Part shown: piece after piece, positions 622-64,000 of the stretch
How the letters are laid out: each line of letters begins with the position of its first letter
Position numbering within the stretch: the first letter of the stretch is position 1
Source: Macrostomum lignano
Lineage: Eukaryota
Assembly (NCBI GenBank): GCA_002269645.1
Contig: NIVC01000464.1
Span: 124,001 to 188,000 of the forward strand
Reading direction: 5' to 3'
Length of the DNA: 64,000 nucleotides
Program-made: the position numbers and the translations under genes
Notes under the pieces: model-generated
Told to the model about the DNA's origin: nothing
Database searches by the model: none
The model's input: the letters and a program-made list of their open reading frames with translations, nothing else

Positions 622-18022
<17,401 letters not shown>

Positions 18023-18224
18023 ATTGGCTGATAGATTGATTTATTATTGATTTGTTTGTTATATAGCGATAGCGGATTTTAAGAAATTAAACTCGTTTCC
18101 TTTCTCTCTGAAAGGACAGAAATGATATTTTTAGGATAGGTTGTATATGAATACTAATACTGAGATATATTATATGGTTCTTAATTAATAACATACTTTA
18201 CGTAAGAGCTATATACGAGTTACA

Positions 18225-18590
18225 GGTAAGGGGGGGCGGTGTGCACCCTGGCGCACTTTAAGCAACATTGTCACACAACCGGCGAGAGGCATTACTGCCC
18301 ATTCCGCCGACTCCCCTGAGCAGGCATACAAGCGCGCGGATACGTTACGCAGGCACACACTCACAGGAGTGTACAGAGGCCCTGACTTTATTAATCGTTA
18401 GGCATGTACACTTCACTGTGAATTGGGGGGGGGGGGGGTTGGCCCTTAAGGCAGTTAATTGCCCTGAGCCGAGCCAAGCCGAGATTCTAATTCAGCCCCA
18501 AATTAATGTGACTGCACTTGGAATCGAGCCTGGGCCGCTGGAACATCAGAGCGCCGCGCTGGACCGCTGGGCTACGGCACCCTGCACCAG
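18225..18590 (-). mobile_element. tRNA-derived SINE, family 1, copy 1
   Basis: Minus-strand head GGGTGCCGTAGCCCAGCGG...CCAGGCTCGATTCCAAG (A and B boxes). About 360 bp, co-linear with 27378-27730. Confidence 0.8.
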
Positions 18591-18853
18591 AGAGCTATAT
18601 ACGGCTACCTATTATTTATTATTGATGCATATAATGTACAAAAATACAAAACTTTCAAAACAGACTACATCAAGTTTATTTACTCATAGAACATATGCTT
18701 TGAAGCTACTATGAGTACAGAGTAACAGTATTTAAAATTTAATTATTGATCAAGGAGGAATTAGAACGGCAAAGCCAGGCCTTCAAATGTTTGTGAACGA
18801 TTTAGCCAAATTTAAATGCTAATTTTTACACAGTCAATTTCAGTCACTACATG

Positions 18854-21800
18854 TCAAGAATCAGCAGTTGCAGACGAAGACGTCAAAGGCAAACTCTGTT
18901 TAAACTTTATCAACCGTTTGTGCACTTCATCGGAGCCCAGATGGTGGAAAATCTCGCGCACTGATGGCCCCTCAGATTGGCCTGTCATTAGCAGCCTGGC
19001 CGCTTTGAAATGCAACGGCGAAGGCTTCTTAACTGAGCCAGTCGGCAAGGATGATGACGTCATGCTTGACAGTAGATCCATAGCGGACAATGCTAGACTG
19101 TCAGCGGTGCAGTGTGCTGCAGCAGACTCTGATAAGAGTTGAGCCAGGCCTTGCCACACTGCACTATCATCGGGAGCTCGAAATAGGTAACTATGCGAGT
19201 CCACATCGAATAGAGTTGCTAGGCGACCGCGTAGGGTTGCTAGGCATCTGTGCAGTTCGGCGTCGCTTGGAGAACTGTTTAATTTATGGGGAATTAATTA
19301 GGGTGAATTAGAGTAGTTATTAAAAAATGCCACATGTGAGATTCTAGCGCCAATAAATACCCGAAAGTGAGTTTAAAGCTCCAATTTATCACCACAGGTG
19401 AGATTCTGGCGCCAATTTAGCGCCCCAGGTGAGATTCTAGCGCCAATTCAGCGCCCCAGGTGAGATTCTAGCGCTAATTTAGCGCCGTAGATGAGAGTTT
19501 AGTGACAATTAAGCGCCGCAAGTGAGATTCTAGCGCTAATTTAGCGCCGCAGGTGAGATTCTGGCGCCAATTTAGCACCGCAAGTGAGATTTCAACGCCA
19601 ATTCAGCGCCCCAGGTGAGATTCTAGCGCCAATTTAGCGCCCTAGGTGAGATTCTAGCGCCAATTTAGCACCCCAGGTGAGATTCTAGCGCCAATTTAGC
19701 GCCGTAGATGAGAGTTTAGTGACAATTAAGCGCCGCAAGTGAGATTCTAGCGCTAATTTAGCGCCGCAGGTGAGATTCTAGCGCCAATTCAGCGCCCCAG
19801 ATGAGATTCTAGCGCCAATTGAGCGCCGCAGATAAGATTATAGCGCCAATTTAGCGCCTTACGTGGTATTTCAACGCCAATTTAGCACTGCAAGTGAGAG
19901 TTTAGCGCCAAATTTAGCAGAAACACATGACTAACCCTTCAATCCCATCAGCCAGAGCCAGCCGGTCTCTAACAGCTTGGATAGCAGCTGTGGATGCTAA
20001 TTCCGGAGTTAGCGAACGCAGCCCGGCAGATCGCAGAGCGGCAGGATCCAACCGGGCATCCCGACTAGCCAGACACTGCTCAGTGAGCTCGATTGCGCTG
20101 CAGAACTCTGACAGCGTTTTGGCTGGCGACTGCTGTGTCTGAATAGCGGCGGATTAGTGCTAGATATACATGCAGATAGGCTACCCTTCGATAATTCGCC
20201 TCCTTATTAGACCCTTCGATAATCCGCCTGACCCTTTGATAATCCGCCTGACCCTTAGATAATCCGCCTCCTTATTAGACCCTTCGATAATCCGCCTGAC
20301 CCTTCGATAATCAGCAGCCCATTCTGGCACTTCGATAATCCGTCCACTCTGAACCTTCGATAATCCAACCACTCTGACCCTTCGATAATCCGCCCCCATT
20401 CTGACCCTTCGATAATCCATCCCCCCTCTGGCCCTTCGATAATCCATTCACTCTGACTCTTCGAATAATCCGCTCTCTGGCCCTTTGATAATACATTCAC
20501 TCTGACTCTTCGAATAATCCGCTCTCTCTGACCCGTCGATAATCCGCTCTCTCTGACACTTCGATAATCCACCTCTTTGACCCTTTGATAATCCACTTAC
20601 TCAGACCCTTCGATAATCCACTCACTCAGACACTTCGATAATGCGCCCCTTTGACCCTTTGAAAATCCGCCCGTTTGATTTTACCCTTCGATAAGCCGCT
20701 CATTTGCCTTTTGATAATCCGCCTTTTTGACACTTCGATAATGAGCCCTCATTTGACCCCTCGATAATCCGCCCAATTTGACCCTTCGATAATCCACCCA
20801 CTCAGTTACCAGTTCCTGCTCAGCAGACGACTCTCCAATCCGCCGTCCAGTCCAAGTGGCCGACACCAGCCAATCAATAACAGCCTCGGGCAGGTAGCCG
20901 AGAGCGCGCAGCTCGCGAATCTCCGTAGCAACCGCCGGTCCGTCTTTGCCGCTACTGCCGCCGCCGCCGCCCTTCCGTTTAGACAGCTTGGCACCGTCTC
21001 GCCAGTCTAACAACAGCGGTAGATGAGCGAACAGCAACGACGACGGCGGCGGCGGCGCGTCAGTGTTCGACGGCAGCACAGAGTCGAGCGCGGCTCGCAG
21101 TAGCACATGCTTCGGCGCCGATGGCAGCCATTCCCGGCCGCGGATGACGTGAGTAACGCCAGAGCATCGGTCGTCGAACACGCTGGCAAGATGGTACACT
21201 GGCCAGCCGTCAGACTTCAATAGCACAGGATCGGCTTCCATGCCGGTTAGGGGGAAGCTTAGATCGCCTAGCAGGAGGTCGCGGACTCGAATCGTTGATG
21301 GCGATGTTGATGATGAGGATGACAATGATGACGGAAGTAGACGAGCAGCTGCGGCGCGCATGTTAAAGCGAATCACTGGTGAGCGCTCACCTGATGAGGC
21401 AAAAAGTGTTCAGTCGGACACGGGCTGCCAGTCTAGCTCACAGATAGTAGAATAACCAGATTGGCCAGTCAGCACATTTGCGTGTAAGCTACTGTCAGTT
21501 CAGTAGTAAGTTAAACTGAAGCAGTTTGATGTATTTTAGAGCCAAGGCTCATTTATAGGTTCTTAACCCCCAGCTTAAACCCTTCAACCACGCCTTTCCA
21601 CACTAGCCCCCCCTCCGCCCCGCCCCAATTTTTATAACCTTTCTCGAAATTTCAGTCTAAAGCTGCCATGTACATTTAAGAGGACTGGCCAATGTACATT
21701 ATTGCTGACCCCAATTAGCAAGCTGTTTACGCACCTGCAAGCTTTGCTTGGACTTCAAAACTTATCAAAGTTATTTCAGCTGCCTTATTTTTTATAAAAT

Positions 21801-24276
21801 AGCTTATGTATTCTTCTTTGCTACCGAACTGATAGTAGAAAGCTGTTTTTACTAAGCATATATGCCTGAGTGGCCCAGCTAATTATTCTATACATATTAG
21901 GTCATTGCAGGAGGGGCATTGAGGCAATTCTACCCAATCCGCTGACTCCCTGGGCACATACAAGCTACCGGTAAGCCACTGTACGCGGGCACGCACTCAT
22001 ACACAGGCTTACATAGGGTGTACAGCGGGTCTTTGATTTCTAATTTCTCGGGCACACAAGCCCGAAATGAAAGTGGCCGCGCACGGAATCAAATCAGCTG
22101 TTCTGCTTTTTCGAAGATCTTCAAAGACTGTTGCCAATGCTTAATAAATTCTTCTGTTTTTGTGCTTTCGCAATTGATGCGATAGAGGCGACTGTTGCGT
22201 CACAAGTGCGTCACGTGAGTTGTAGAATCAGAGTGGCGAAAGAGTCGTCCCAAGAATCGTTGGCGCTCATGAGTCACTGAGTTGTGTCTGAATGTGATAG
22301 AGTCGCTATTGAGTCAATGAGTTGTGTCTGAATGTGATAGAGTCGCTATTGAGTCAATGAGTTGTGTCTGAATGTGATAGAGTCGCTATTGAGTCAATGA
22401 GTTGTGTCTGAATGTGATAGAGTCGCTATTGAGTCAATGAGTTGTGTCTGAATGTGATAGAGTCGCTATTGAGTCACTGAGTTGTGTCTGAAGGTGATAG
22501 AGTCGCTATTGAGTCACTGAGTTGTGTCTGAAGGTGATAGAGTCGCTATTGAGTCACTGAGTTGTGTCTGAATGTGATAGAGTTGCTATTGAGTCACTGA
22601 GTTGTGTCTGAATGTGATGGAGTCGCTATTGAGTCAATGAGTTGTGTCTGAATGTGATAGAGTCGCTATTGAGTCACTGAGTTGTGTCTGAAGGTGATAG
22701 AGTCGCTATTGAGTCACTGAGTTGTGTCTGAATGTGATAGAGTTGCTATTGAGTCACTGAGTTGTGTCTGAAGGTGATGGAGTCGCTATTGAGTCACTGA
22801 GTTGTGTCTGAATGTGATGGAGTCGCTATTGAGTCACTGAGTTGTGTCTGAATGTGATAGAGTCGCTATTGAGTCAATGAGTTGTGTCTGAATGTGATAG
22901 AGTCGCTATTGAGTCAATGAGTTGTGTCTGAATGTGATAGAGTCGCTATTGAGTCAATGAGTTGTGTCTGAATGTGATAGAGTCGCTATTGAGTCACTGA
23001 GTTGTGTCTGAATGTGATAGAGTCGCTATTGAGTCAATGAGTTGTGTCTGAATGTGATAGAGTCGCTATTGAGTCAATGAGTTGTGTCTGAAGGTGATAG
23101 AGACGCTATTGAGTCACTGAGTTGTGTCTGAATGTGATAGAGTCGCTATTGAGTCAATGAGTTGTGTCTGAATGTGATAGAGTCGCTATTGAGTCAATGA
23201 GTTGTGTCTGAATGTGATAGAGTCGCTATTGAGTCAATGAGTTGTGTCTGAAGGTGATAGAGTCGCTATTGAGTCACTGAGTTGTGTCTGAATGTGATTG
23301 AGTCGCTATTGAGTCACTGAGTTGTGTCTGAAGCGCATTTGAGTCGCTTGATAAATTAGAGTCACAGCGGCGTTTCGGCGGCATTCTCCAGTCGCTAAAG
23401 CGCTTAAGCCACTGTAGCGCTTTGTATACGTTACAGAGTCAGAGTTACAGTTACACAATAAACATTCAGTGTAGTTTATTAAATTCTAATTGCACTCTAA
23501 CTAGCCTACTGAGTTAGTAGTAGAAAGTTAAGCGTCAAAACAATGATTCTTGGCCAACTCTTGCAACTTTTACGATTCTACAACTCAAGTGACGGGCTTG
23601 TCACGCAGCAGTCGCCTCTACCGTCGTATCAAGACACATTTGAATCGTAATTAAGTCACAGGAGTCTCCCCAGAGTCACTAGAAAGTCGTTTGCAATGAC
23701 TTTTCAGCAATTCTTGTCACTGTAACATTTTCAAAGAGGTGTTACAGATGATTAAATTGTCAACTGACCAGCCGCCATCAGCTGCTGTCGCTCGTCAGCC
23801 GTCAACAATCGGCATTTGCCATCGTAGCCGGGCGTCTGCCCGGCGGCCCGTTGATGCCGACGCAAGAGCTCCAGCCGGTGCTCGGAGCAGAAGCACGGAT
23901 AGGCCAGGCCGCTATCCACTAGCCTAGCAGCGGCGTCTCTGTATTTGTCCAGCCTGTTAGACTGAACCGGCACTGAGTCTGCATTGTCCGGCCTCAGTCC
24001 TAGCCAATCCAATGACTCTAATATATCGCTAGCAGCTTCCGGTTTGCAACGCTTAGCATCCGTATCCTCTAGGCGTAATAGAAACCGGCCGTTGCTATGC
24101 CGTTTGGCGAAGGCAAAATTTACTAGAGCTGTACGAGCTCCGCCAACGTGCATGCGACCGGTGGGCGAAGGTGCAAAACGAACCACTACAGGCTGAGGCT
24201 CGCGGCAGCCGCCGCCTCCGCTGCTTGAGCAGAGCCGCAGGCGGCTGATGTGGCCAATAATTCCAGTAGATTTTCG
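18854..24276 (-). CDS. EARS2: Mitochondrial glutamyl-tRNA synthetase (class I GluRS), 4 coding exons; start codon not in the first visible exon
   Basis: Exons 24276-23769, 21390-20810, 20138-19936, 19274-18854, GT-AG with consistent phases. Motifs: VRFAPSPTGRMHVGGARTAL (HIGH), FLLRLEDTD, AYPCFCS, YDGKCR, KSDGWPVYHLASVFDD, VTHVIRGREWL, KLSKR (KMSKS-like), C-terminal LLMTGQSEGPSVREI. The N-terminal 30 codons are Arg/Ser-rich and presequence-like. Confidence 0.9.
19340..19920. repeat. 31 bp minisatellite (GAGATTCTAGCGCCAATTTAGCGCCCCAGGT), EARS2 intron 3
   Basis: Direct reading. Confidence 0.88.
20185..20800. repeat. Variable-length minisatellite with GACCCTTCGATAATCC core, EARS2 intron 2
   Basis: Direct reading. 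Confidence 0.85.
21443..21892. mobile_element. MITE-like palindromic element, copy 2 (EARS2 intron 1)
   Basis: Co-linear with 8773-9201 (AAAGCTGCCATGTACATTT, GGCCAATGTACATTA, CAATTAGCAAG, AAATAGCTTATGTATTCTTCTTTGCTAC). Confidence 0.75.
21905..22050 (-). mobile_element. Diverged fragment of the SINE family 1 central region
   Basis: CCAATCCGCTGACTCCCTGGGCACATACAAGC...GGGTGTACAGCGGGTCTTTGATTTCTAAT resembles the middle of 18225-18590. Confidence 0.55.
22275..23335. repeat. 40 bp minisatellite (GAGTCACTGAGTTGTGTCTGAATGTGATAGAGTCGCTATT), EARS2 intron 1
   Basis: About 26 units. Confidence 0.95.
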
Positions 24277-24295
24277 CTGCAGAGATATTTAGAAA
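24277..24295 (-). promoter_or_regulatory. 3' splice acceptor preceding the ATG-less first coding exon of EARS2 (candidate trans-splice acceptor)
   Basis: TTTCTAAATATCTCTGCAG|CGAAAA on the minus strand; phase 0 with the GluRS frame; in-frame TAA five codons upstream. Confidence 0.6.
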
Positions 24296-24409
24296 GCTAT
24301 AATTTAATGCATGGTTGCTAGTGCTTTCACTAATGACTTATGAAATGGCTTATTAGGACTAGAGCTGAATAGTACTACAGAGAGAGAGAGGGAGAGAGTG
24401 ATACCTCAG

Positions 24410-25070
24410 AGGACTGAATGAGTCATAGAGTGGTGTCAGACCATTGAATGAGTCATAGAGAGAGGAATGACAGACTACTGAATGAGTCATAGAAAGAGGA
24501 ATGACAGACCATTGAATGAGTCATAGAGAGAGGAATGACAGACTACTGAATGAGTCATAGAGAGAGGAATGACAGACTACTGAATGAGTCATAGAGGGAG
24601 GAATGACAGACTACTGAATGAGTCATAGAGAGAGGAACGACAGACTACTGAATGAGTAATAGAGGGAGGAATGACAGACTACTGAATGAGTCATAAAAAG
24701 AGGAATGACAGACCATTGAATGAGTCATAGAGAGAGGAATGACAGGCTACTGAATGAGTCATAGAGAGAGGAATGACAGACTACTGAATGAGTCATAGAG
24801 AGAGGAATGACAGACTACTGAATGAGTCATGGAGAGAGGAATGACAGACTACTGAATGAGTCATAGAGAGAGGAATGACAGACTACTGAATGAGTAATAG
24901 AGAGAGGAATGACAGACTACTGAATGAGTCATAGAGAGAGGAATGACAGACTACTGAATGAGTAATAGAGGGAGGAATGACAGACTACTGAATGAGTCAT
25001 AGAGGGAGGAATGACAGACTACTGAATGAGTCATAGAGAGAGGAATGACAGACTACTGAATGAGTAATAG
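24410..25070. repeat. 34 bp minisatellite (GACTACTGAATGAGTCATAGAGAGAGGAATGACA) between UBE2S and EARS2
   Basis: Direct reading. Confidence 0.93.
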
Positions 25071-25783
25071 AATGGTTTTAAACTACTAAAATACGAGTAT
25101 CGATGCACAGACATAGATCTATGCTCATAAATTGTAATAAACTACAGTAATATAAATTAAACCAGTCAGTAAGTAGTTCGTTAAAATACGTGTTACAGTT
25201 TATTACATTTTAAACAAATATTGGTTGAGTCATTAATTGCGAATGTTGTGGAAAACAAATATTAGCTGTTGTCATAAAAAATACCGGTCAATTATTGGCA
25301 TTTGCTCGTGCAGCAAGGGATGTAAAAAATGAGAAAAATCAATTTCATACTAGCATTACTTTCAATTGGTCAGGTACAAAATGAGTTGTTGGAATAAAAT
25401 AAGACGCCACTCAGTTGAGTTAACAAAAAGCATTATTAATTTTTGTGCACTGTGTGCTATAATTGGCATAGCCGCAACTTAATTGTAATTATATAGATAG
25501 GTAAACGCAATAATAAAATGAAATAAATTAGAATACATACCGAAGACTTTTAGTTAGCAGAATGTAAAAAAATTAATAAAAGCATCGGCCGTGTACAAGT
25601 ATAGGCTATTGACGTTTATTACTGTATTAAAACAATGATACAAAATGTACACACACTTGATGAAAGTAAATCACACTACTAATAGTAACAGGTCATTTTA
25701 AGCAACGAGGACCATTTAGATATTTAAAGTTAATAAAAGCGGTTCATTTATTCTCAGCTGAACGCTTAAGCGACCGCACCGCA

Positions 25784-27167
25784 TCACAAACGTTTCAGCG
25801 CCTTTTTAGTCTTGCTTTTAGCTGCATTGGCTCCGGCTGCGGTTCCAGTTGATGAGGCTGACGCTGCAGAGGGCTTCTTTGAGCTGTCGCTGCCAGATCC
25901 GTTCTCGTTGGAATCCTTCAGGCTGGACGGCGGTTTGGGATTTGAGATGGATTTTTAAGCTGGTGACTTAAATTTTGGATTTGGGATTAAGGTTTGGGAT
26001 TTGAGATGGATTCTTAAGCTGCTGACTTAGATTTGAGATTTTGGGATTAAGGTTTGGGATTTGAGATGGATTTTTAAGCTGGTGACTTAGATTTTGGATT
26101 TTGGGATTAATGTTTTGGATTTGAGATGGATTTTTAAGCTGGTGACTTAGATTTGGGATTTTGGAGTTTGGGGTTAGGTTTAGGATTTGAGGATTATGCT
26201 AGGGATTTGGGGTTAGGTTTGGGATTTGCGGATTAGATTTGGGAGTTCAGGATTATGCTATGGATTTGAAGATCAGGTCTGGGATTTGGAGATTAGGCTT
26301 GGGATTTAGGGATTAGGTTTGGGATTTGTGGATTAGATTTGGGATTTGGGATTAAGGTTTGGGATTTGAGATGGCTTTTTTAAGCTGGTGACTTATATTT
26401 GGGATTTTGGGATTTGGGGTTAGGTTTGGGATTTGAGGATTACGCTAGGGATTTGGAGATTAGGTTTGAAATTTGAGAATTCGTTTTGGGATTTGATGAT
26501 TATGCTAGGGATTTGGGGTTAAGTTTGGGATTTGGGAGTATGTTTGGGATTTGAGGATTAGATTTGGGATTTGAGGATTATGCTATGGATTTGGAGATTA
26601 GGTTTGGGATTTGGGAAATATGCTTAGACTTAAAATCATAACTGAATAGACTATGATGATTACTTAAACTCACATAGCAGCAGAGTCGCCGCCTTCTGTA
26701 CACTTTAACGCGTGAATCTCCGTGTAGAGTCGAGCCCGAGCAAAGTACTCAGAGTACTCTTCTAGCAAAAGTCGGCCAGCATCTTCATTTAAGGCTGACT
26801 CGGGATTAGGCACAATGAGCAGGCATTTAATCACTAGGAGAAGCTTCTTAAGCCCGGTGTCCGGTGTCCAATCCCGTTTGAGCGTGTTAACACAGATCTC
26901 CCCAGTCTGAGGTGCAATATTCGGATGAAATATCTTAGTGATAAAGTAGCCCTTCGGCGGCTCATTAGGATAGTTGGAACCCAGATGCAGCTTGATGTGA
27001 AAACTGCCGCCAGCGTAGGGTGTGTCAACAGGACCATCAATATAGGCCTGGATGTCTGCGAGGTTGGATTCATTGAACACAATTCTAATGCCTTCTGGTG
27101 GATGAAGCAGCAGTTCCTTCACTTCCTTTGACAGCTGCCTCACCACCGATGGCTGACAGTTTTCCAT
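25784..27167 (-). CDS. UBE2S: Ubiquitin-conjugating enzyme E2 S, 2 exons
   Basis: Exon 27167-26674 encodes the UBC fold ([44 protein letters not shown]). Donor AT|GTGAG joins acceptor CCAG|C at 25922; exon 2 ends [13 protein letters not shown]-stop (25784), the basic LRRL-type tail typical of UBE2S. Confidence 0.93.
25935..26630. repeat. Degenerate GGGATTT/GGATTAG-rich repeat, UBE2S intron
   Basis: Direct reading; irregular period. Confidence 0.8.
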
Positions 27168-27377: not shown

Positions 27378-27730
27378 GTGGCAGGGAGGTTGTGTGCACC
27401 CTGGCACACTTTAAGCGACATTGGCACACAACCGGCGAGAGGCATTACTGCCCATTCCGCCAACTCCCCTGAGCAGGCATACAAGCGCGCGGATACGTAC
27501 GCAGGCACAAACTCACACAGGAGTGTACAGCAGCCCTGACTTTATATTATCATTACGTATGTACACTTCATTGCGCCTTGGGGGGTTGGCTCTCAAGGCC
27601 ATTAATTGCATAAGCAGAGCCAAGCCAAGATTCCATTTTAGCCCCAAATTAATGTGACTGCACTTGGAATCGAGCCTGGGTCTCTGGCACACTAGAGCAG
27701 CTGCGCTACCGCTGGGCTATGGCCCCCCAT
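27378..27730 (-). mobile_element. tRNA-derived SINE, family 1, copy 2
   Basis: Co-linear, highly similar copy of 18225-18590 (CACAACCGGCGAGAGGCATTACTGCCCATTCCGCC...CACTTGGAATCGAGCCTGGG). Confidence 0.8.
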
Positions 27731-28098: not shown

Positions 28099-30005
28099 TG
28101 CGGGGTGATTCAAAAGTAACAAGAATTTTGTGTTATAACTTTTGAACAGATGAACTTATCAACTTGAAGTTTTCACACAACAATTTTTCAAATATTCATG
28201 AAATACATAGCTTCAGTTTCAGCTCTATAAGCCAATTCAAAACAAGTAGTATCCTGCGTAAAAGTCTGAACTTAGAGATAAAAAAATTATGTATCTTGTC
28301 TATGGTCTGGAGACTATAAAAAAATTCTTGAATTTTAAAGCTGGCTCTTAGTGCTGGCTCCTTCTTCCATTATTTATAGACAAAGCTGATTTGATTTTTT
28401 GTTTTAAACTGCAGTGTCATGCCAATTTGCAAATGTTTAGCTCAGTGACTGGACTAATCAAAGTGCCTTAAAGTTACAAGTGAGAGCATCCAAAAGATCA
28501 CACAGAAATTAGATCAAAGGATAGGCCAATGACATTTTATTGCCAGTCTGGTCTAACTTGGAAAGAGGCTATACAAAACCACTTGGGACCTAAACCAACC
28601 CTTTGGAGATCACTGCATGGGTTTATGCTCACTGCAAGGCATTCTACAAGGGTGCAATAGGATGTGGTGATGCACCAAAGTTTGGTCCTCACTGCATGGT
28701 CAACAGGCAATAAAAGCAAGGAAATTGCCTATGATTATCTTTGCACCAATTCATTTATTACAATGCATAAAATTAAGGTTTGTTACCTTTCCATCACTTC
28801 TATGAGCCACATCTTCAAGGTCAAGGAGATCAATTGGTCTATGCTAAGTGGGTGCTGCATGAGTTGACCCTGGATCAAAAAGGTAGCAAGTTCAATGTGC
28901 TATGGAAAACTTGTGGGTGTGGCAACAAGTTAGTGATGAAGAGCTTAAACAACTTTTTATCATCATGGATAAGATGCAGCTGCCAATGTTCAACCCACTC
29001 ACTAAGCAACAGTCAATGCAGTGGGGGCCTAGGGGCTATCAGGGGCGTAGCCAGGAATTTCCTACGGGGGGGATACACCAAGGTGAATTTCCTACGGGGG
29101 GATACACCAAGGTAAAAGTGCTCACATGGTAGCATGTATAGCGAAAAAGTGCAACAAAAAAGTTTTGGTCAGGCTCTTCTTCGGGGGGGGGGATACATCC
29201 CCCCTGATCCCCCCCTCCCTATGCCACTGGGGGCTATCAGCCATACACAAAGCCAATGAAGTTGGCTTGGACGTGCAACATCATGTGCACTATGTGGTTT
29301 GATGCCTGTGGTATTCTGATAGTCAACTATCTGCCAGAAAAGACTATCAATTCCACTTACTTGCAAGATCAGCTTGTTTGCACAAGGTCTTCAAATTTTA
29401 ACAAGGAGTTTAACAAGGAAGCGCCACATTATACATGCTAGGACTTTCATCCTATGGGACAATGTTCACCCTCATATTGCTGCAGCCACCATAAAGAAAG
29501 TGGAAGAGCTTGGCTTTTAGCTGCTCAATTATCCGCTTATTTACCAGACCTCCCCATTGCTAACTTTCACTTGTGAATGAAGAAGCCTATGCAAGGTTGT
29601 GCCTTCACCAGTCATGAGAAACTTGTAGTGGAGGCCAACAAATATTTTTATTTCTTGCCTATGAGCTTCTGGGAAGAGAATGTTGACAAGCAGCTATATT
29701 GTATAAGAAATATATTTAGCTCAATGACAGCTTTGTGGAACATTTTGAAATTGTTAAAAAATAGATGGAGGCACTAGTTTTTTTTACACAGTAAACATGT
29801 TTAACTTATTCACTTTTCTATAAACAAAAAATTATAGTTGTTTATCTTGAGGTTTAGATTTTCACACAGGATGCTACTGTTGAGTATTGGCTTATAGAGC
29901 CAGAACTAAAGCAGTATGTTACATGAATATTAGAAAAATTATTGCATGAATTTTCAAGTTGATAAGTTATAACAAAATTCTTGTTAATTTTGAAACACTT
30001 CTTAT
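28099..30005 (+). mobile_element. Decayed mariner (Tc1/mariner) DNA transposon with TIRs
   Basis: TIR-like GGGGTGATTCAAAAGTAACAAGAATTTTG (28102) and inverted CAAAATTCTTGTTAATTTTGAAACACTT (~29970-30000). Remnant transposase YAKWVLHELTLDQK (WVPHEL motif, ~28840) and ILWDNVHPH (~29450), with stops and frameshifts. Confidence 0.75.
29040..29229. mobile_element. Small MITE nested in the mariner remnant
   Basis: Ends CAGGGGCGTAGCCAGG and CCCTATGCCACTG are imperfect inverted repeats; internal duplicated GAATTTCCTACGGGGGGGATACACCAAGGT. Confidence 0.5.
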
Positions 30006-30269: not shown

Positions 30270-30822
30270 CCGACAAGATGGTGATCATCGCATGCTACAA
30301 CAGCTTTGGCATTATTCTCATCCACTGCATTCCTGAGGGCCAAAACATCAACCAACAATACTACCAGAGCTTCATTATTCACCATCTTTGGCCTGCCTTA
30401 TGCAAAAAGTGGCCACAGACCCTGGAACTTGGTCCACTCCTTCTGTACGACAATGCCAGTTTGCACACAGCCTGCATTGTGCAGGACCTACTGCGGGACT
30501 ACCAGTGGGAGGTGCTGCCTCATCCTCCTTACTCCCTAGACCTCAGTCCCTACAATTTTGACCTTTTTCCGAAGCTTAAGAACCAGCTCCGAGGGCATCA
30601 TTTCCATTGCCTGGATGACCTGTTCAGCAAGGTCGGCCATATTGCAAAAGACCTATGCGAATCCAGCGCTGCTGATAGCGTTCAGAAGTTGCCTGGCTGC
30701 TAAGAGCGCACAATTCAAGTCAATAGAAGTTATTTTGAAGGTTTTTGACATGTTCATTGTTCTGACACTCGTTTGTTGAAAATTAGTAGGTGTTTGCTGA
30801 AACTTTTGGGATGACCCTTGTA
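30270..30822 (+). mobile_element. 3' half of a second mariner transposase (catalytic domain) with right TIR
   Basis: ORF 30278-30703: LLYDNASLHTA...WEVLPHPPYSLDLSPYNFDLFPKLKNQLRG is the mariner DD34D C-terminal signature (last Asp replaced by Asn). Ends GAAACTTTTGGGATGACCCTTGTA. Confidence 0.85.
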
Positions 30823-33368: not shown

Positions 33369-34310
33369 TCAGCTGTCAAGATAGACTTCGGCCCGGATGA
33401 CATGCCCGGCAAGCTGCAGACGTCGCTTGCTCAGCAGGACAGAAGGCCGCGTCAGGTGCGCTCTCGCTGGTACGGGGAGTCGGTCATCTTGCTGCCAGGG
33501 CCGCGGCGGGCGCCGAACGCGGCACGAATCAGAGCCGTATGCGCCACATCGAGCTGCCTCTCGAGCGCCCAGTACAGGGTCGAGGGCGGTCTCGACAACA
33601 GCCTGGAACAGCTGCCATTGGAACCTAAAGCTGTCCAATAGAGCCTCTGAAAGCAGCTCCGCCCACAGATCGAAAGGCGGCCCAGGCCTTGCCGGCCGCG
33701 CCGTCTCCCAGGTCGTCGCTCACATCCGTCACCAGCCCGCTAAAGTAGAGGGGCTGACGGCACTTGGTGCACCGTCCCAGGGCCATCGTGCCGTCTCTGA
33801 GTCTTATCTTGGCGGGTAGATCGTGGGGAACTGTCAGCACCTCGGTATTTTTGGCGTTGATGACGAGGCCGACCCTTGCAGCCGCCACAATCAGGCCATC
33901 CAGCAGCCGTTGGGGCGCCTTCGGCCGTCGTAGACAGCATGCAGGGCGAGGTCGTCCGAGCTAGTAGCCGAGGAGGAACAGCCTCTTCTCCGGGTGTCGC
34001 CGACTGGTGTCGCCTTTGCAGTAGAAGGCCGTTCTCTGCTGTCGGCAGGCCGCCGCCTCCTGAGCACACAGTCCATCAGCAAAACAAAGAGGAGAAGGGC
34101 GCCAGAGTGTCACGGCCTGCAGCACTCCGGAGGTCGTGCTGAACAGGTCCGACGGTCCGTCGGCGTCGCTACCGCAGCGGTCGTGTCCTGGTACAGCGCC
34201 ATGTTTGCGAAGATCAGCTACTGCGGTACGGAGCACGTGAGGGAGCGCACCGCGGGCCACCGAGTCGAAAGCCTTGAGGAAGTCGACAAAGATTGATGAA
34301 ACTGTTTGAT
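33369..34310 (-). pseudogene. Decayed non-LTR (RTE-like) reverse transcriptase fragment
   Basis: Frameshifted pieces FVDFLKAFDSVARGALPHVL, DLFSTTSGVLQ, GLVINAKNTEVL, AWAAFRSV, RRLQLAGHVIRAE, typical of RTE-clade RT and its C-terminus. Confidence 0.7.
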
Positions 34311-35046
34311 GAAACGCAATGAAAATGCATAACTTTTTTCTTGGCGCCATGCAAGTCTCAGCTGCCCCAACAGAATATGATTGGATCATACCCATGCAGA
34401 ACACGTGCATGCAGTACATATACATGTACATATGTGTACATGTAATTATAAAGTACAAATAGATTTTACAAACGGAAACTGTAGATCTTTAATTTTAAAG
34501 GGCTTCAAAATAGCTAAGGCATTATAATTAGGTTCCCGTAAGAAATGAAATACATTATACTCGCGTGTATTTTAGCTTGTTACACGTACACTGTTAAAGT
34601 AAAAATAAATTGTAGTAACATCCATCTCCTTGGCTTGGACGCTGAGTTAAAGATTGTTTAGGCAGAATAATACATTTATGTATTTATAAAAGAAAAACTT
34701 TCAATATACTCGTTTGCTAACAAAAACTAGCAACAAAAATAGCACAAATAATTAACATACACTTAAAAATAGTTTAGCTTAATTTTACACAGAGAAGAAA
34801 GAGTCTTTTGACGACATGCTGACTGAGAAGTGAACGGGTTATTTAAAGTCTTCGATTAGCTAATGGTATTTACTGTTTGCTAGTAATGAGGCTGGTCCAA
34901 AAGGCCCGATTAAATAGCCGTCAGCCAACCATATTGTAATAATTTCCTTTAACTTAATGGCTAACAAACTTCAACAGCAGTTTTTTTTGCTAAATTCATT
35001 CTTGACCATACTTAGTCCGGATCCTGACAGTAACTTATTAGAATGT

Positions 35047-38427: not shown

Positions 38428-40099
38428 ATGGGATGCATAAGATTAGCATTGCTATTTAGCATTGTGCTGGTGATCCTCATCGAACCTGGTGAAGGCTGTG
38501 TCAAGAAATTGAAGGCTTTGAAAGGTGGTAAGTAGTCAGTCTTGCAGTTGGCAATGAAATTGGTAAAACTTGAGACTGTTCGAATTCATACGGCCTTTTT
38601 TAACACGCTCGTACTGAGATCAACGCGGGAGGGAGCTGTCGTGCGATTCGGGCACAGAAAGTGTACATGCCTGATGATTAGACAGTCAAAGGGCCGCTGT
38701 ACACCCAAGGACAACTTAAGTAGAAGAACGCAACACTCGAAATCTAATGGTAAATATTTTGACGGCAACTTTTCGCCGAAAAATACACTACAGAGATAAG
38801 AGGATTTAATCTTTGTAGCACAAAAATTGTTATTGCTTTTGATAGGAGGCAGATCCAGTGTTCATATTTTGATATGTTGTGCCTTTTTTTATTGCTCTAT
38901 CGATATTCATAAAGCTTTTCGTCCAGAAATAGTTTTAAAGGAAGGTTTCACCGGAAAAATACATTAAGGAGATAGGAAATTTCACGATTTTCAACACTAA
39001 AACAGTGATTGGGTCTCTTAACAGTGTCAGAGAAAGTTCTAATCACACTATTTTGTGCCTCACATGCTGCTCTCACGACGCATTAATCGATTTTTCATGT
39101 TAAATTGGTCTGTCACTTGAAAAAAACGTTTAAAATAATTACAAGACCAATATAAAGGCGAAAAGTTGCCTTCAAAACATTTACCAATAGATTTCGAGTG
39201 AGGCGCGCTTGTGTACACCCTGTGTGAGGCGCGCTTGTGTACACCCTGTGTGAGGCGCGCTTGTGTACACCCTGTGTGAGGCGCGCTTGTTTACACCCTG
39301 AGTGAGGCGCGCTTGTGTACACCCTGTGTGAGGCGCGCTTGTGTACACCCTGTGTGAGGCGCGCTTGTGTACACCCTGTGTGAGGCGCGCTTGTGTACAC
39401 CCTGTGTGAGGCGCGCTTGTGTACACCCTGTGTGAGGCGCGCTTGTGTACACCCTGTGTGAGGCGCGCTTGTGTACACCCTGTGTGAGGCGCGCTTCTGT
39501 ACACCCTGTGTGAGGCGCGCTTGTGTACACCCTGTGTGAGGCGCGCTTGTGTACACCCTGTGTGAGGCGCGCTTGTGTACACCCTGTGTGAGGCGCGCTT
39601 GTGTACACCCTGTGTGAGGCGCGCTTCTGTACACCCTGTGTGAGGCGCGCTTGTGTACACCCTGTGTGAGGCGCGCTTCTGTACACCCTGTGTGAGGCGC
39701 GCTTGTGTACACCCTGTGTGAGGCGCGCTTGCATGCAGAATCGCCTCAGCGCTGCGGCTGTGGGAAGATGTCGCCGAAGCGTATCCCAATTATTATTGCT
39801 ATTATTTTCTAAATGCCACTGGGCATTCATTCATTTCATTCTAACAAAACTTCGCGCCCCCAGCTTTCAAGAGAGTCGGCAAGGTGTTCAAAATAGCCAG
39901 ACGCCCAAAAGCCGCCAAAGTCATTGCGAATTCTGCGGACGACGTTGGCAAGGTGGCCAAGAAGTCCAAGAGCTTCAGCACGGCGCGCTCGCTCCTCATT
40001 GGTGGCACGGTTGGAGGTGCGGCACTGGGGGGCGCCGTGTACGTGGGGGAAAAAGAGAAGAAAAAAGGCATGAGCAGCGGTTCGTACGTCACCCACTAA
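38428..40099 (+). CDS. Secreted cationic peptide B (~111 aa), amphipathic helix plus glycine-zipper segment
   Basis: Exon 1 38428-38527 (MGCIRLALLFSIVLVILIEPGEGCVKKLKALKG), donor G|GTAAGT. Exon 2 39864-40099 after CCCCCAG: AFKRVGKVFKIARRPKAAKVIANSADDVGKVAKKSKSFSTARSLLIGGTVGGAALGGAVYVGEKEKKKGMSSGSYVTH-stop. Confidence 0.85.
39197..39730. repeat. 26 bp minisatellite (GAGGCGCGCTTGTGTACACCCTGTGT), intron of gene B
   Basis: About 20 near-perfect units. Confidence 0.95.
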
Positions 40100-44635: not shown

Positions 44636-45062
44636 ATTGCGGAGACCGCTCCGCAACCATCAGCTGCAGTTTTATTTATTAAGGACGAAACCGAGATAAT
44701 TGACAGTTTAAGGCGCAGCTCAAGACAAAAGCCTGAGAAGTTTTGTTAATATTCTAGAGTTCTACTGGTCAGGAAATTTAATTTCGTTTACTTTACTGGA
44801 TCGGTTTATAAATAATACACAGGACAGTGTTTTAACTCATTTTTAATTGCCTGTTTTATTGCAATTTCTCATTCAATTAGATGTATTGCGATTTTCAAGA
44901 GGATAGAGAAGTACGAGCTATTTGTGCAGCACTGTATTGTCTATTGTGGTATTAGAGAGAAAAAACTGCTATGGCAATTACCGCTGGCACGGACTGCTCG
45001 GTTTCAGCTTGCAGGAGTGTAAGCTGCCGGGTAGGATTAATTATGGAGGGCGCTGAAGCGTC

Positions 45063-45955
45063 AGCACCAGGATATTTAGCACCAGTGGTTTTAGCACCAG
45101 TGGCTTTAGCACCAGGGGCTTTAGCACCAGTGGCTTTAGCACCAGTGGTTTTAGCACCAGTGGTTTTAGCACCAGGGGCTTTAGCACCAGGGGCTTTAGC
45201 ACCAGGGGCTTTAGCACCAGGGGCTTTAGCACCAAGGGCTTTAGCACCAGGGGCTTTAGCACCAGGGGCTTTAGCACCAGGGGCTTTAGCACCAGGGGCT
45301 TTAGCACCAGGGGCTTTAGCACCAGGGGCTTTAGCACCAATGGTTTTAGCACCAGTGGCTTTAGCACCAGGGACTTTAGCACCAGTGGCTTTAGCACCAG
45401 TGGCTTTAGCACCAGTGGCTTTAGCACCAGTGGCTTTAGCTCCAGTGGCTTTAGCACCAATGGTTTTAGCACCAGTGGCTTTAGCACCAGGGACTTTAGC
45501 ACCAGTGGCTTTAGCACCAGTGGCTTTAGCACCAGTGGTTTTAGCACCAGTGGTTTTAGCACCAGTGGCTTTAGCACCAGTGGTTTTAGCACCAGTGGTT
45601 TTAGCACCAGTGGCTTTAGCACCAAGTGCTTTAGCACCAGTGGTTTTAGCACCAAATGCTTCAGCACCAGGGGCTTTAGCACCAGGGGCTTTAGCACCAG
45701 GGGCTTTAGCACCAGGGGCTTTAGCACCAGGGGCTTTAGCACCAGGGGCTTTAGCACCAGGGGCTTTAGCACCAGGGGCTTTAGCACCAGGGGCTTTAGC
45801 ACCAGGGGCTTTAGCACCAGGGGCTTTAGCACCAGGGGCTTTAGCACCAGGGGCTTTAGCACCAGGGGCTTTAGCACCAGGGGCTTTAGCACCAGGGGCT
45901 TTAGCACCAGGGGCTTTAGCACCAGGGGCTTTAGCACCAGGGGCTTTAGCACCAG
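45063..45955. repeat. 15 bp minisatellite (GCTTTAGCACCAGGG/GTG)
   Basis: About 59 units; source of the GAKAP, LAPGA and LVLKP ORFs. Confidence 0.95.
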
Positions 45956-46500
45956 AGACGATTGCATGGAAAGGCGGAAGGCCATGCTGCCACCAGTCCA
46001 GTTGAACGCGGAGCTCGCCCGCCACGGGAATCCGGCGATGACACCCATTGATGGTGTTGGTGACGTCAATTCGAGCTCGCAGAAAGACTCGAGCGGGGCG
46101 AGCCACCTTGCAAAAACCAGCCGATTTTGCCCACCAGCTTTTGAAGTTGAAGCTTTGACAGACTCTTAGCGCTCAAACCTCCACGCAGCAACATCCGCAG
46201 CTCATCTGTCTTGCTCTGCGGCAGGGATAGCAGCTAGACCGGATGTGCTGTCGATTTGCACTCCCAGGAATGTGATACACGTAGCAGGTGGGCTGGTATT
46301 TTCCCAATCGATGCAGCTAATCCCAGCGTGGGAGGCAAGTCGTATGAGCTTCTAAAAAAACAACAACGCACACCGCCGGGGAACAGACTACAGTTCACAA
46401 AGGTTGGTGTCGGATCAGTCTTCTCAGCGCTGGCTCTCTGAAGGCGGCTACAGCGTGCACCTGGCCAATCACCCCAGCGTAATCCAGCTAGCAATCCGCG
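45956..46500 (-). pseudogene. DIRS-like (tyrosine recombinase retrotransposon) RT/RNase H junction fragment
   Basis: Frameshifted pieces LGLAASIGK, PATCITFLGVQIDST, LQLQKLVGKIGWF, VARPARVFLR...ELRVQLDWWQHGLPPFH resemble the DIRS RT thumb and connection region as I recall it. Confidence 0.55.
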
Positions 46501-46609
46501 AAGCACATCCGGAAGTACAACACAATTAGAATAAATAAAATGAAGGTATAAAAGTGGGAACATTAAGTCAATATTTGCTAGTATGAACTCGAAATGTGAG
46601 TAAAGGAAA

Positions 46610-47780
46610 CGACAGTGTACGTCAATATTGTGGGTCAATATCGTACGTCAATATCAGTCACTTCGCCCTGGAGTGCACCCTGGCCAAAGTCCTAACACCA
46701 TCCTTCGAAACCGCATTCAACCCATCATCAACCAGAGGCTTCTCAATATCCAGAACGGCTTCCAACCTGGACGGTCAACAGCAAAAACAAGTCGCTGCGG
46801 TCCGGTGCATCATAGACACCTGCAAGACTCGCCAAAAGGCGGTGTCAATTGTTTTTGCAGATTTGTGCAAAGCTTTTGACTCAGTCAGCCGGGCGGCCAG
46901 GCCATTGCGTAGCTCCTCCAGCAGCATGGAGTTTCTCAGATGCTGGTCCAGGCGATCATGGACCTCTACAGCTCATCCAAGGCGCTTTCGTCTAGACTGA
47001 CCACGGCCCTAAAGCTGAATTGACAACCACTTCCGCAAAGCGACACCTGTTTGTATTCGTCATCCTGATCGACTTCGTCATGCGGTTGGCTCTGCGCGAT
47101 GAAGACGGCTATGAAGTGGTGCTTCGCCGTAGCTCCCGCTTTGCCTGCGTCAAGCCGACCTGCCTCGCCTGCGCCGACGACCTGGCGCTGACCTGCTGCA
47201 GTCTCAAAGCTGCGCAGACGGCGGTGAGTCGGCGGACCAACGAGGGGAAGCGCGTGGGGCTCCACATCAACTACGGCAAGGCAGAGGTGCTGCATGTTGG
47301 CATTGCCAACTCTCCACTGCTGCTTCTGCCGGACAGCAACACCATCGCCCTGTGCAACCAGTTCAAGTATCTGGGGTGTCCTGGTCTCTGACCCGGATGT
47401 CATTGTCAACAACCGCAAGCACAGCCTGGTGGGCCTCCCACCTTCTCCGCTCCATCTTCAACTACTGGCTCGCCACCGACAGCCTGAACGTCGCCCTATT
47501 CCGCTCGGCAGTTGAGACGGTGCTGACCTACGGGCTGCTGGAAGCTGTTCCCATGACTGCCACTCGTCAGGCGAGCTTGGAGGGCTGCCATCGCCACCTC
47601 ATGCACAATGCCCTGGGCATCCGGTTCCCGAGCGCGTGAGCAACGCCGAGCTGGCGGCCCGGACCCGCGTGGTCGCAGAGACGACGCCAGATGTTGATCG
47701 GCCTCTGCCTGCGTGCCCACACACGGGGCACCGGGCCCCAGCTCACCGACCTGCTGCTCAGCCACCACTCTGACGGACAC
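46610..47780 (+). pseudogene. Decayed non-LTR (RTE-like) reverse transcriptase fragment
   Basis: ILRNRIQPIINQRLLNIQNGFQPGRST, SIVFADLCKAFDSVSR, LFVFVILIDFVMR, LACADDLAL, GLHINYGKAEVL, FKYLG, LFRSAVETVLTYG, spread over several frames. Related to 33369-34310. Confidence 0.75.

Positions 47781-60829: not shown

Positions 60830-64000
<3,171 letters not shown>

What the first reader, a model, noticed from the sequence alone, without database searches (positions are those of the whole stretch)
24186..24295. EARS2 has no usable start codon; a spliced-leader AUG would complete an in-frame mitochondrial presequence
Seen: the GluRS frame is closed by TAA just upstream of the acceptor CTCTGCAG|CGA (24276), and its first ATG lies inside the HIGH region (GRMHVGG), which would delete VRFAPSPTG. 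The acceptor is exactly phase 0. I found no convincing ATG-containing phase-0 donor exon in 24300-25780. Established: flatworm spliced leaders end in AUG, which can act as the initiator. Inference: SL trans-splicing gives M-RKSTGIIGHISRLRLCSSSGGGG..., an Arg/Ser-rich presequence-like N-terminus with no acidic residue in the first 26 positions, so the gene would depend on trans-splicing for translation and import.
Basis: partly seen in the sequence, partly recalled or inferred. Interest (0 to 1): 0.78.

Follow-up and report, generated by a model that had tools for sequence, protein, structure and literature searches.

The report
Spliced-leader start codon for flatworm EARS2
In this Macrostomum lignano scaffold the mitochondrial glutamyl-tRNA synthetase gene has no start codon of its own and almost certainly borrows the AUG at the end of the trans-spliced leader, a mechanism already known in flatworms, so this is a clean new example, not a new kind of thing.

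Summary
On the minus strand a four-exon EARS2 gene (570 codons) starts at the acceptor ctctgcag|CGA (24277/24276). An in-frame TAA lies four codons upstream. The only genomic in-frame ATG (24153) sits 12 residues inside the catalytic domain.

The window is identical to M. lignano Mlig_3_7 scaffold NIVC01000464.1. The published M. lignano spliced leader ends in ...TTGCATG, and the site fits the published SL-acceptor motif YTNCAG.

GenBank annotates all three EARS2 copies as 5'-partial, with no upstream exon. Here EARS2 is Mlig013908g6. The same-strand upstream UBE2S is Mlig013908g5, the same transcriptional-unit cluster.

Two other contigs of the same assembly read TTGCATG|CGAAAATCT at this position instead of CTGCAG|CGAAAATCT. 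That is the last 7 nt of the leader joined at the predicted junction, giving ATG-CGA in frame. The assembly was polished with RNA-seq, so this is either a footprint of the trans-spliced mRNA or a real allele.

No SL-containing read was seen directly, and the mitochondrial presequence is supported only by position, length and composition. Use of the SL AUG as initiator is established in flatworms (Cheng et al. 2006).

Verdict: interpretation supported; new member of a known kind; modest interest.

The parts
24277..24282 (-). 3' splice acceptor CTGCAG (AG = 24278-24277), the proposed SL trans-splice site; the first exon base is 24276
   Evidence: Sequence. Fits the published M. lignano SL-acceptor motif [T/C]TNCAG. 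Replaced by TTGCATG in contigs L002 and L005.
24289..24291 (-). In-frame TAA that closes the EARS2 frame four codons upstream of the acceptor
   Evidence: Conserved in all four assembled copies.
23769..24276 (-). EARS2 exon 1: 30-codon N-terminal extension (RKSTG...PQP), then the catalytic core with PSPTG (24171-24157) and HVGG (24150-24139); donor G|GTCAGT
   Evidence: Splice junctions confirmed by UniProt and GenBank M. lignano models.
24151..24153 (-). Only genomic in-frame ATG (Met43 if the SL Met is residue 1), inside GRMHVGG
   Evidence: The catalytic domain starts at residue 31.
20810..21390 (-). EARS2 exon 2 (catalytic domain; KLSKR = KMSKS motif at 20989-20975; poly-Gly insert of variable length)
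19936..20138 (-). EARS2 exon 3
18854..19274 (-). EARS2 exon 4 (anticodon-binding domain, stop TGA 18856-18854)
24413..25071 (.). 34-bp tandem repeat (19.5 copies) filling almost half of the UBE2S-EARS2 intergenic space (outron)
25784..27167 (-). Upstream same-strand gene UBE2S (exon 1 27167-26674, exon 2 25922-25784; AATAAA at 25752 and 25620); GenBank Mlig013908g5
17792..18022 (-). First coding exon (CAP-Gly) of downstream same-strand DCTN1; ATG 18022; candidate acceptor ctatcag| 5 nt upstream

Best explanation
EARS2 of M. lignano (GenBank Mlig013908g6 at this locus) is made from a pre-mRNA whose 5' part (outron) is removed by spliced-leader trans-splicing at ctctgcag|CGA (24277/24276). It is probably a polycistronic unit that also carries the upstream UBE2S, and possibly the downstream DCTN1. 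The 35-nt leader CGGTCTCTTACTGCGAAGACTCAATTTATTGCATG brings the cap and, with its last three bases, the only usable AUG. The AUG is in phase, so translation gives M-RKSTGIIGHISRLRLCSSSGGGGCREPQP followed by the GluRS core. The 30-residue basic, Ser-rich, acid-poor extension most likely acts as the mitochondrial presequence. Shown here: the gene structure, the lack of a genomic start codon, the quality and phase of the acceptor, the species and its SL, the 5'-partial transcript-based models, and an SL-tail/exon junction preserved in sister contigs. Inferred: trans-splicing at this exact site in vivo, initiation at the SL AUG, mitochondrial import, and operon membership.
For: 1) Window = Mlig_3_7 NIVC01000464.1. 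M. lignano proteins match at 99-100%.
2) The SL sequence ends in ATG, about 30% of genes are SL trans-spliced, and the acceptor motif is YTNCAG (PMC8629364). The site reads CTGCAG and is the only phase-0 AG with that motif.
3) No genomic ATG lies before Met43. The Pfam and PDB GluRS alignments start at residue 31.
4) GenBank models PAA82522.1, PAA50957.1 and PAA68726.1 are all 'partial'. They start at IGHISRL, 18 nt after the acceptor, and have no upstream exon. They come from a pipeline that cuts transcriptional units at SL and poly(A) signals (PMC5730564).
5) UBE2S and EARS2 at this locus are Mlig013908g5 and g6. The intergenic distance is about 1.3-1.45 kb, or 0.66-0.79 kb without the tandem repeat. 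That is under the 1-kb repeat-adjusted operon threshold of PMC8629364.
6) Contigs L002 and L005 read ...aatatcTTGCATG|CGAAAATCT, the last 7 nt of the SL at the predicted junction. The assembly was Pilon-polished with RNA-seq.
7) SL-AUG initiation is established in flatworms and includes mitochondrial proteins.
8) The extension is as long as the presequences of orthologues (24-30 residues), with 5 basic residues, 1 acidic residue, and none acidic in the first 26.
Against: No SL-containing read or cDNA for this gene could be retrieved; exact look-ups of M-RKSTG... found nothing. The GenBank partial CDS starts 18 nt downstream of the acceptor, not at it, and this offset is unexplained. The same pipeline gives different starts for identical UBE2S upstream sequences, so it may be boundary noise. 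Helical amphipathicity of the extension is no better than in shuffles, and no trained targeting predictor was available. The Echinococcus orthologue has its own genomic ATG, so the ATG-less design is not conserved across flatworms. If the TTGCATG haplotype is real, the animal also has copies with a genome-encoded start, which weakens 'the gene depends on trans-splicing' at the level of the organism. By my reading of the sequence, the SL AUG context (U at -3, C at +4) is not a strong Kozak context.
Confidence: 0.85

Rival explanations
1. A cis-spliced upstream exon supplies the ATG. One version is a small unannotated exon in 24300-25780. The other is read-through from UBE2S, as in the fused UniProt models that join ...KKALKR to (F)RLRLCSSS.
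For: Three WormBase-ParaSite/UniProt models (A0A1I8G0L6, A0A1I8IFA5, A0A1I8FXX5) fuse UBE2S+EARS2+DCTN1 in one ORF. They use donor CGTTT|GTGATG and acceptor CATCAG|CCGC at 24244. 41 formal ATG...GT phase-0 candidates exist upstream.
Against: The fusions skip each stop codon by a few bases with weak donors, which is typical of a gene predictor bridging neighbouring genes. The later transcript-based GenBank annotation splits the three genes. A UBE2S-EARS2 fusion would have no N-terminal presequence. None of the 41 candidates has a donor like the gene's real ones, and most lie in the tandem repeat.
Confidence: 0.05
2. The mRNA is not trans-spliced, or the SL AUG is skipped, and translation starts at the genomic Met43 or at a non-AUG codon. 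The in-frame CTG at 24282-24280 is one candidate, but it is present only in unspliced RNA.
For: Met43 is the first AUG in any frame after the acceptor, so scanning ribosomes that miss the SL AUG would start there. The annotated 5' end lies 18 nt inside the exon.
Against: A Met43 start removes VVVRFAPSPTGR, the first strand and the loop before HIGH, which every bacterial GluRS sequence retains from its residue 2. It also removes the whole targeting extension, so the product is unlikely to be an active mitochondrial enzyme. The coding sequence is kept intact, with only synonymous differences between haplotypes in exon 1, including the extension. There is no evidence for CUG use.
Confidence: 0.05
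3. The copy in the window is a silent or redundant allele. The functional EARS2 is the haplotype (L002/L005) whose genome really encodes TTGC-ATG-CGA, and that ATG is an ordinary start codon.
For: Two separate contigs of a haplotype that differs by about 4.5% in intron 1 share the ATG variant. Given an ATG, the four preceding bases matching the SL by chance is only about 1 in 256.
Against: The window copy and L004 keep a complete, uninterrupted 570-codon ORF with all motifs. The variant converts exactly the acceptor into exactly the SL tail by five adjacent base changes with no length change. That is what end-to-end-aligned SL reads would impose during RNA-seq polishing. Even if the allele is real, it confirms M-RKSTG as the N-terminus, and the ATG-less copies would still need the SL.
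Confidence: 0.05

Closest known systems
[quoted passage not shown]
   Same: The SL ends in AUG, the acceptor lies in phase directly before an ORF that has no AUG of its own, and the conserved N-terminus is recovered only with the SL Met. In S. mansoni the SL AUG is in frame in 28% of trans-spliced transcripts and more than 40 cDNAs need it. In E. granulosus 143 of 187 SL clusters are full-length with the SL ATG, including mitochondrial proteins such as NADH-ubiquinone oxidoreductase and COX6B homologues.
   Different: Those cases rest on sequenced SL-bearing cDNAs and in vivo assays in parasitic species. Here the species is the free-living M. lignano, the gene is EARS2, and the evidence is genomic and annotation-based with no read in hand.
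SL-resolved operons / transcriptional units of M. lignano (Wudarski et al. 2017, PMC5730564; Ustyantsev & Berezikov 2021, PMC8629364)
   Same: Same-strand neighbours UBE2S-EARS2-DCTN1, repeat-adjusted spacers under 1 kb, the same TU-cluster prefix (Mlig013908g5/g6), and repeats inflating the spacer as those authors describe.
   Different: SL and poly(A) read tracks for this unit were not available, so operon membership is inferred.
Relic spliced leaders from recycled cDNAs in dinoflagellates (Slamovits & Keeling 2008; recalled from my own knowledge, not checked here)
   Same: If the TTGCATG|CGA haplotype is real, part of an SL sits in genomic DNA directly before the mature 5' end of the mRNA.
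   Different: Only 7 nt are SL-like and the introns are retained, so it is not a retrogene. An RNA-seq polishing artefact explains it at least as well. The exon's own 5' end shows no significant similarity to the SL.
Metazoan mitochondrial glutamyl-tRNA synthetase EARS2 (e.g. Echinococcus CDS41260.1, Calicophoron CAL8072845.1)
   Same: Class I GluRS core with PSPTG-x-HVGG and KLSKR, Pfam PF00749 + PF19269, and a 24-35 residue N-terminal extension before the core.
   Different: The orthologues examined start with a genome-encoded ATG (Echinococcus transcript L001). The M. lignano protein carries low-complexity inserts (poly-Ser; poly-Gly of 5-11 residues near KMSKS).

Membership tests
SL-AUG-initiated flatworm genes | The organism has an SL RNA whose leader ends in AUG | tested here: met
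   Species identified as M. lignano. SL CGGTCTCTTACTGCGAAGACTCAATTTATTGCATG from PMC8629364. The SL RNA gene itself is not in the window.
SL-AUG-initiated flatworm genes | A 3' acceptor directly upstream of the ORF, in phase with the SL AUG | tested here: met
   ctctgcag|CGA, phase 0, YTNCAG, 13/20 pyrimidines.
SL-AUG-initiated flatworm genes | No genomic AUG that preserves the conserved N-terminus | tested here: met
   TAA four codons upstream; the first ATG is Met43, inside the domain that starts at residue 31.
SL-AUG-initiated flatworm genes | SL-bearing transcripts joined at this acceptor | tested here: inconclusive
   No read or cDNA was retrievable. Indirect evidence: 5'-partial transcript-based models and TTGCATG|CGAAAATCT in two RNA-seq-polished contigs.
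SL-AUG-initiated flatworm genes | Translation actually starts at the SL AUG | not testable with these tools
   Needs ribosome profiling, N-terminal proteomics or reporter assays.
Mitochondrial GluRS (EARS2), class I aaRS | Catalytic domain with HIGH and KMSKS motifs and a GluRS anticodon-binding domain | tested here: met
   PF00749 E=5.8e-61 (residues 31-378); PF19269 E=1.4e-5, 25.9 bits against a 23.6-bit cut-off; HVGG and KLSKR present. Best named relatives include proteins named EARS2 from animals.
Mitochondrial GluRS (EARS2), class I aaRS | Cleavable N-terminal mitochondrial presequence | tested here: inconclusive
   30-residue extension, +5/-1 charge, 6 Ser/Thr, no acidic residue in the first 26. 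The hydrophobic moment is not above shuffles. MitoFates and TargetP were not available.
M. lignano SL-resolved operon | Same-strand genes, repeat-adjusted spacer under 1 kb, downstream gene trans-spliced | tested here: inconclusive
   Strand and spacing are met and the TU-cluster prefix is shared. Trans-splicing of each gene was not directly seen.

The most novel reading that the evidence does not exclude
The TTGCATG|CGAAAATCT haplotype (NIVC01003528.1 and NIVC01004000.1) is real DNA. In that reading, part of the spliced leader, including its AUG, was copied from a trans-spliced EARS2 mRNA back into the gene, for example by cDNA-templated repair. This destroyed the acceptor and turned an SL-donated start codon into a genome-encoded one. 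One animal would then carry both states of the same gene side by side. That would be a direct snapshot of how genes move between dependence on and independence from trans-splicing.
Probability: 0.2. Interest if true: 0.6.

Novelty: new member of a known kind. Interest (0 to 1): 0.33.

Why it matters
It explains why the public M. lignano EARS2 models are '5' partial' or wrongly fused to their neighbours, and it gives the likely true N-terminus (M-RKSTG...). It is a clear case in a free-living model flatworm where an essential mitochondrial translation enzyme needs trans-splicing for its cap, for its start codon and therefore for its targeting signal. The gene could serve as a handy endogenous reporter for SL-AUG use. 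It also flags a technical point: genome assemblies polished with RNA-seq can carry spliced-leader tails written into acceptor sites. These are errors to correct, but they are also usable footprints of trans-splice junctions.

Tried and rejected
- Direct transcript evidence. The homology search with exon 1 returned only bacterial-like GluRS at 60% identity or less and missed the identical M. lignano entries. That tool is lossy, so its silence is not evidence.
- Exact look-ups of M-RKSTG..., MHVGG... and GTG-start versions, in two poly-Gly variants, were not in the collection.
- A single-exon window ORF was not on record either.
- Rfam found no RNA family in the window and ARAGORN no tRNA or tmRNA gene. 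No SL RNA gene copy was found.
- The idea that the exon's first 25 nt are a degenerate relic SL was rejected: the local alignment score of 12 is reached by 38% of random windows.
- The other TTGCATG sites in the window occur about as often as chance predicts (6 seen, about 8 expected) and do not start meaningful ORFs.
- The S. mansoni phytochelatin synthase paper looked like a precedent for an SL-supplied mitochondrial start, but it reports no trans-splicing.
- The hydrophobic-moment test of the presequence was uninformative.
- Supplementary tables of three M. lignano papers do not list this gene, and no paper mentions Mlig013908.
- Early taxon guesses from UBE2S and EARS2 hits (trematodes, mites) were inconclusive. 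The DCTN1 search settled the species.
Full report
**What is there.** The finding lies on the minus strand. Reading 24330 to 23760 gives ...ATG CAT TAA (24312-24304) ... TAA (24291-24289) ATA TCT CTG CAG | CGA AAA TCT... This translates as RKSTGIIGHISRLRLCSSSGGGGCREPQPVVVRFAPSPTGRMHVGG....

I assembled the gene from open segments and splice signals. The exons are 24276-23769, 21390-20810, 20138-19936 and 19274-18854, giving 570 codons and a stop. Pfam finds the class I Glu/Gln-tRNA synthetase catalytic domain at residues 31-378, counting a leader Met as residue 1, and the GluRS anticodon-binding domain near the C-terminus. Bacterial GluRS crystal-structure sequences align from their residue 2 to residue 31.

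So residues 1-30 are an extension in front of a complete enzyme. The only genomic ATG between the acceptor and the HIGH motif, in any frame, is at 24153 (Met43). It lies 12 residues inside the domain.

**Is an upstream coding exon hiding?** The same-strand UBE2S gene ends at 25784. Between it and the acceptor lie an AT-rich 3' UTR and spacer and a 34-bp tandem repeat at 24413-25071. I listed every ATG-started, stop-free stretch ending in GT in phase 0 and found 41. None has a donor resembling the three real donors of this gene, and most are copies within the repeat. This cannot exclude a cryptic exon, but it gives no candidate.

**Which organism?** The first two protein searches gave no close relative. 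They pointed only vaguely to protostomes (trematodes, M. lignano at 68%, mites). A search with the neighbouring dynactin gene hit M. lignano proteins at 99%. It also hit UniProt A0A1I8G0L6, a 961-residue model that fuses UBE2S, EARS2 and the CAP-Gly start of DCTN1. That model is 100% identical to my EARS2 from RLRLCSSS onward, apart from a poly-Gly length difference, and it confirms all three intron junctions.

Its 90% cluster holds three GenBank EARS2 entries and the UBE2S entries. Fetching their contigs showed that the window is identical over 13,405 nt to Mlig_3_7 scaffold NIVC01000464.1. By arithmetic, window 24276 is record position 148,276. The earlier searches had simply missed these entries, so their silence means nothing.

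**Does the species do what the hypothesis needs?** Yes.
- M. lignano has one 35-nt spliced leader, CGGTCTCTTACTGCGAAGACTCAATTTATTGCATG.
- About 30% of its genes are trans-spliced and about 15% lie in operons.
- The top motif at SL acceptors is [T/C]TNCAG (PMC8629364).

The site here reads CTGCAG. Of the eight AG sites in the open 5' stretch, three are in phase 0, and only this one has the motif and a pyrimidine-rich run. All reported flatworm leaders end in AUG. Its use as initiator Met is established: the Cheng et al. 2006 results are summarised in PMC9851317, PMC12582326 and PMC3510090. [quoted passage not shown]

**What do the public annotations say?** The GenBank models come from a genome-guided transcriptome whose transcriptional units were cut into genes at SL and poly(A) read signals (PMC5730564). 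All three EARS2 copies (PAA82522.1 at this locus, PAA50957.1, PAA68726.1) are labelled partial. They begin IGHISRLRLCSSS..., 18 nt after the acceptor, and have no upstream exon.

At this locus UBE2S is Mlig013908g5 and EARS2 is Mlig013908g6. Under the naming rule shown in the paper's Supplementary Fig. 5 legend, this puts them in the same transcriptional-unit cluster.

The spacer from the UBE2S poly(A) signals (25752, 25620) to the acceptor is about 1.3-1.45 kb. Without the tandem repeat it is 0.66-0.79 kb, under the 1-kb repeat-adjusted operon threshold of PMC8629364. The EARS2-DCTN1 spacer is similar and is largely a SINE-like repeat.

The 18-nt offset is unexplained. The same pipeline gives a complete UBE2S in one contig and a 5'-partial one in two others whose upstream sequences are identical. 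Boundary noise is therefore likely.

**The most telling result.** Four assembled copies of the region exist:
- L003, which is the window;
- L004;
- L002 (NIVC01003528.1);
- L005 (NIVC01004000.1).

The window and L004 read ...aaatatctCTGCAG|CGAAAATCTACTGG. L002 and L005 read ...aaatatcTTGCATG|CGAAAATCTACTGG. This is a same-length replacement of five adjacent bases. It turns the acceptor into the last seven bases of the leader and creates ATG-CGA in frame, exactly the predicted M-RKSTG.

L002 and L005 are one haplotype: they differ by 2 substitutions in 2.5 kb. That haplotype differs from the other two by about 4.5% in the compared 2.5 kb, mostly in intron 1. In the first ~250 nt of exon 1 aligned I read only two differences, both synonymous.

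The Mlig_3_7 assembly was polished with Pilon using RNA-seq as well as DNA reads. End-to-end-aligned SL-bearing reads would impose just this change. There are three possible readings:
- The bases are a footprint of the trans-spliced mRNA left by polishing.
- The allele is real and was made from such an mRNA.
- The allele is real and simply has an ordinary ATG at that codon.

The first two imply the SL-exon junction at 24276. The third still fixes M-RKSTG as the N-terminus and leaves the CTGCAG copies in need of the leader's AUG.

A 7-mer match at one given position has a chance of about 6e-5. TTGCATG elsewhere in the window occurs at chance frequency and without meaning.

**Presequence.** The extension has 5 Arg/Lys, 1 Glu (at position 27), 6 Ser/Thr, and the same length as the N-terminal extensions of animal EARS2 orthologues. 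My crude helical hydrophobic-moment test is no better than shuffles. The mitochondrial-import part therefore rests on homology (EARS2), position and composition, not on a predictor or an experiment.

**Rivals.**
- The fused UniProt models join ...KKALKR to (F)RLRLC through donor CGTTT|GTGATG and acceptor CATCAG|CCGC. They then join EARS2 to DCTN1 in the same stop-skipping way. This looks like a gene predictor bridging an operon, and the later annotation splits the genes.
- Initiation at Met43 would delete the first strand and the PSPTG loop that every GluRS keeps.
- The Echinococcus orthologue has its own ATG, seen in a transcript contig whose 'M' at Leu9 is only a bacterial-style TTG start call. 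The ATG-less design is therefore not ancestral to all flatworms.

**Verdict.** The mechanism is a known one, so this is a new member of a known kind. The gene is already flagged '5' partial' in GenBank. The one open and more interesting thread is whether the TTGCATG haplotype is real DNA.

Noticed in passing
L002 3976-3982 and L005 8934-8940 (sister contigs NIVC01003528.1, NIVC01004000.1); corresponds to window 24283-24277: The acceptor CTGCAG is replaced by TTGCATG, the last 7 nt of the M. lignano spliced leader, giving a genomic in-frame ATG. This is either an RNA-seq polishing artefact of the Mlig_3_7 assembly or a real allele with a captured SL tail.
   Followed up: partly
window 24258 (annotated CDS start) vs 24276 (acceptor); L003 1098 vs L005 6001 for UBE2S: GenBank 5'-partial CDSs start 18 nt (EARS2) and 6 nt past the ATG (UBE2S) inside the exons, although no AG lies there. 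Identical UBE2S upstream sequences get complete or partial models in different contigs. The gene-boundary calls appear to be offset or noisy.
   Followed up: partly
window 24301-24315, + strand: AATTTAATGCATGGT matches the SL 3' end plus its donor (AATTTATTGCATG|GT) at 14 of 15 bases. It lies on the strand opposite EARS2, about 25 nt upstream of the acceptor, and it contains the palindrome ATGCAT that also forms the minus-strand ATG-CAT-TAA. Probably chance in AT-rich sequence.
   Followed up: partly
window 17792-27167, minus strand: UBE2S, EARS2 and DCTN1 lie head to tail on one strand. Three UniProt (WormBase ParaSite) models fuse them into single proteins of 961, 1301 and 1914 residues. These are annotation errors that probably reflect a polycistronic precursor.
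   Followed up: partly
window ~18230-18600 and ~27380-27710: Two copies of a ~340-nt SINE-like repeat (with a stretch, ggctcgattcc, that looks to me like a tRNA B box) sit in the EARS2-DCTN1 spacer and upstream of UBE2S. ARAGORN calls no tRNA there.
   Followed up: partly
window ~20960-20975 (exon 2, just after KLSKR): The poly-Gly insert next to the KMSKS loop varies in length between copies: 5 Gly in the window and in PAA68726.1, 10 in A0A1I8G0L6, 11 in PAA50957.1.
   Followed up: no
window 61100-64000, + strand: An uninterrupted ORF of more than 967 codons from a non-LTR retrotransposon (reverse transcriptase plus, by eye, an RNase H-like region) runs off the window end and looks recently active. 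Shorter RT fragments lie at ~33960-34460 and ~46600-47000, and a mariner-type transposase fragment at 30278-30703.
   Followed up: no
window 1000-5900, 9700-10250, 11700-13000, 20180-20680, 23000-23332, 25932-26624, 39100-39830, 44950-46100 and others: Minisatellite and microsatellite arrays are very dense inside introns and spacers; for example, (GACA/CTGT)n runs give long spurious ORFs. This fits the repeat-inflated operon spacers described for this species.
   Followed up: no
window 29939-29948, + strand: An exact 10-nt match to the SL tail (TTATTGCATG) is followed by only an 8-codon ORF. About 0.12 such matches are expected by chance in the window; no function is apparent.
   Followed up: partly
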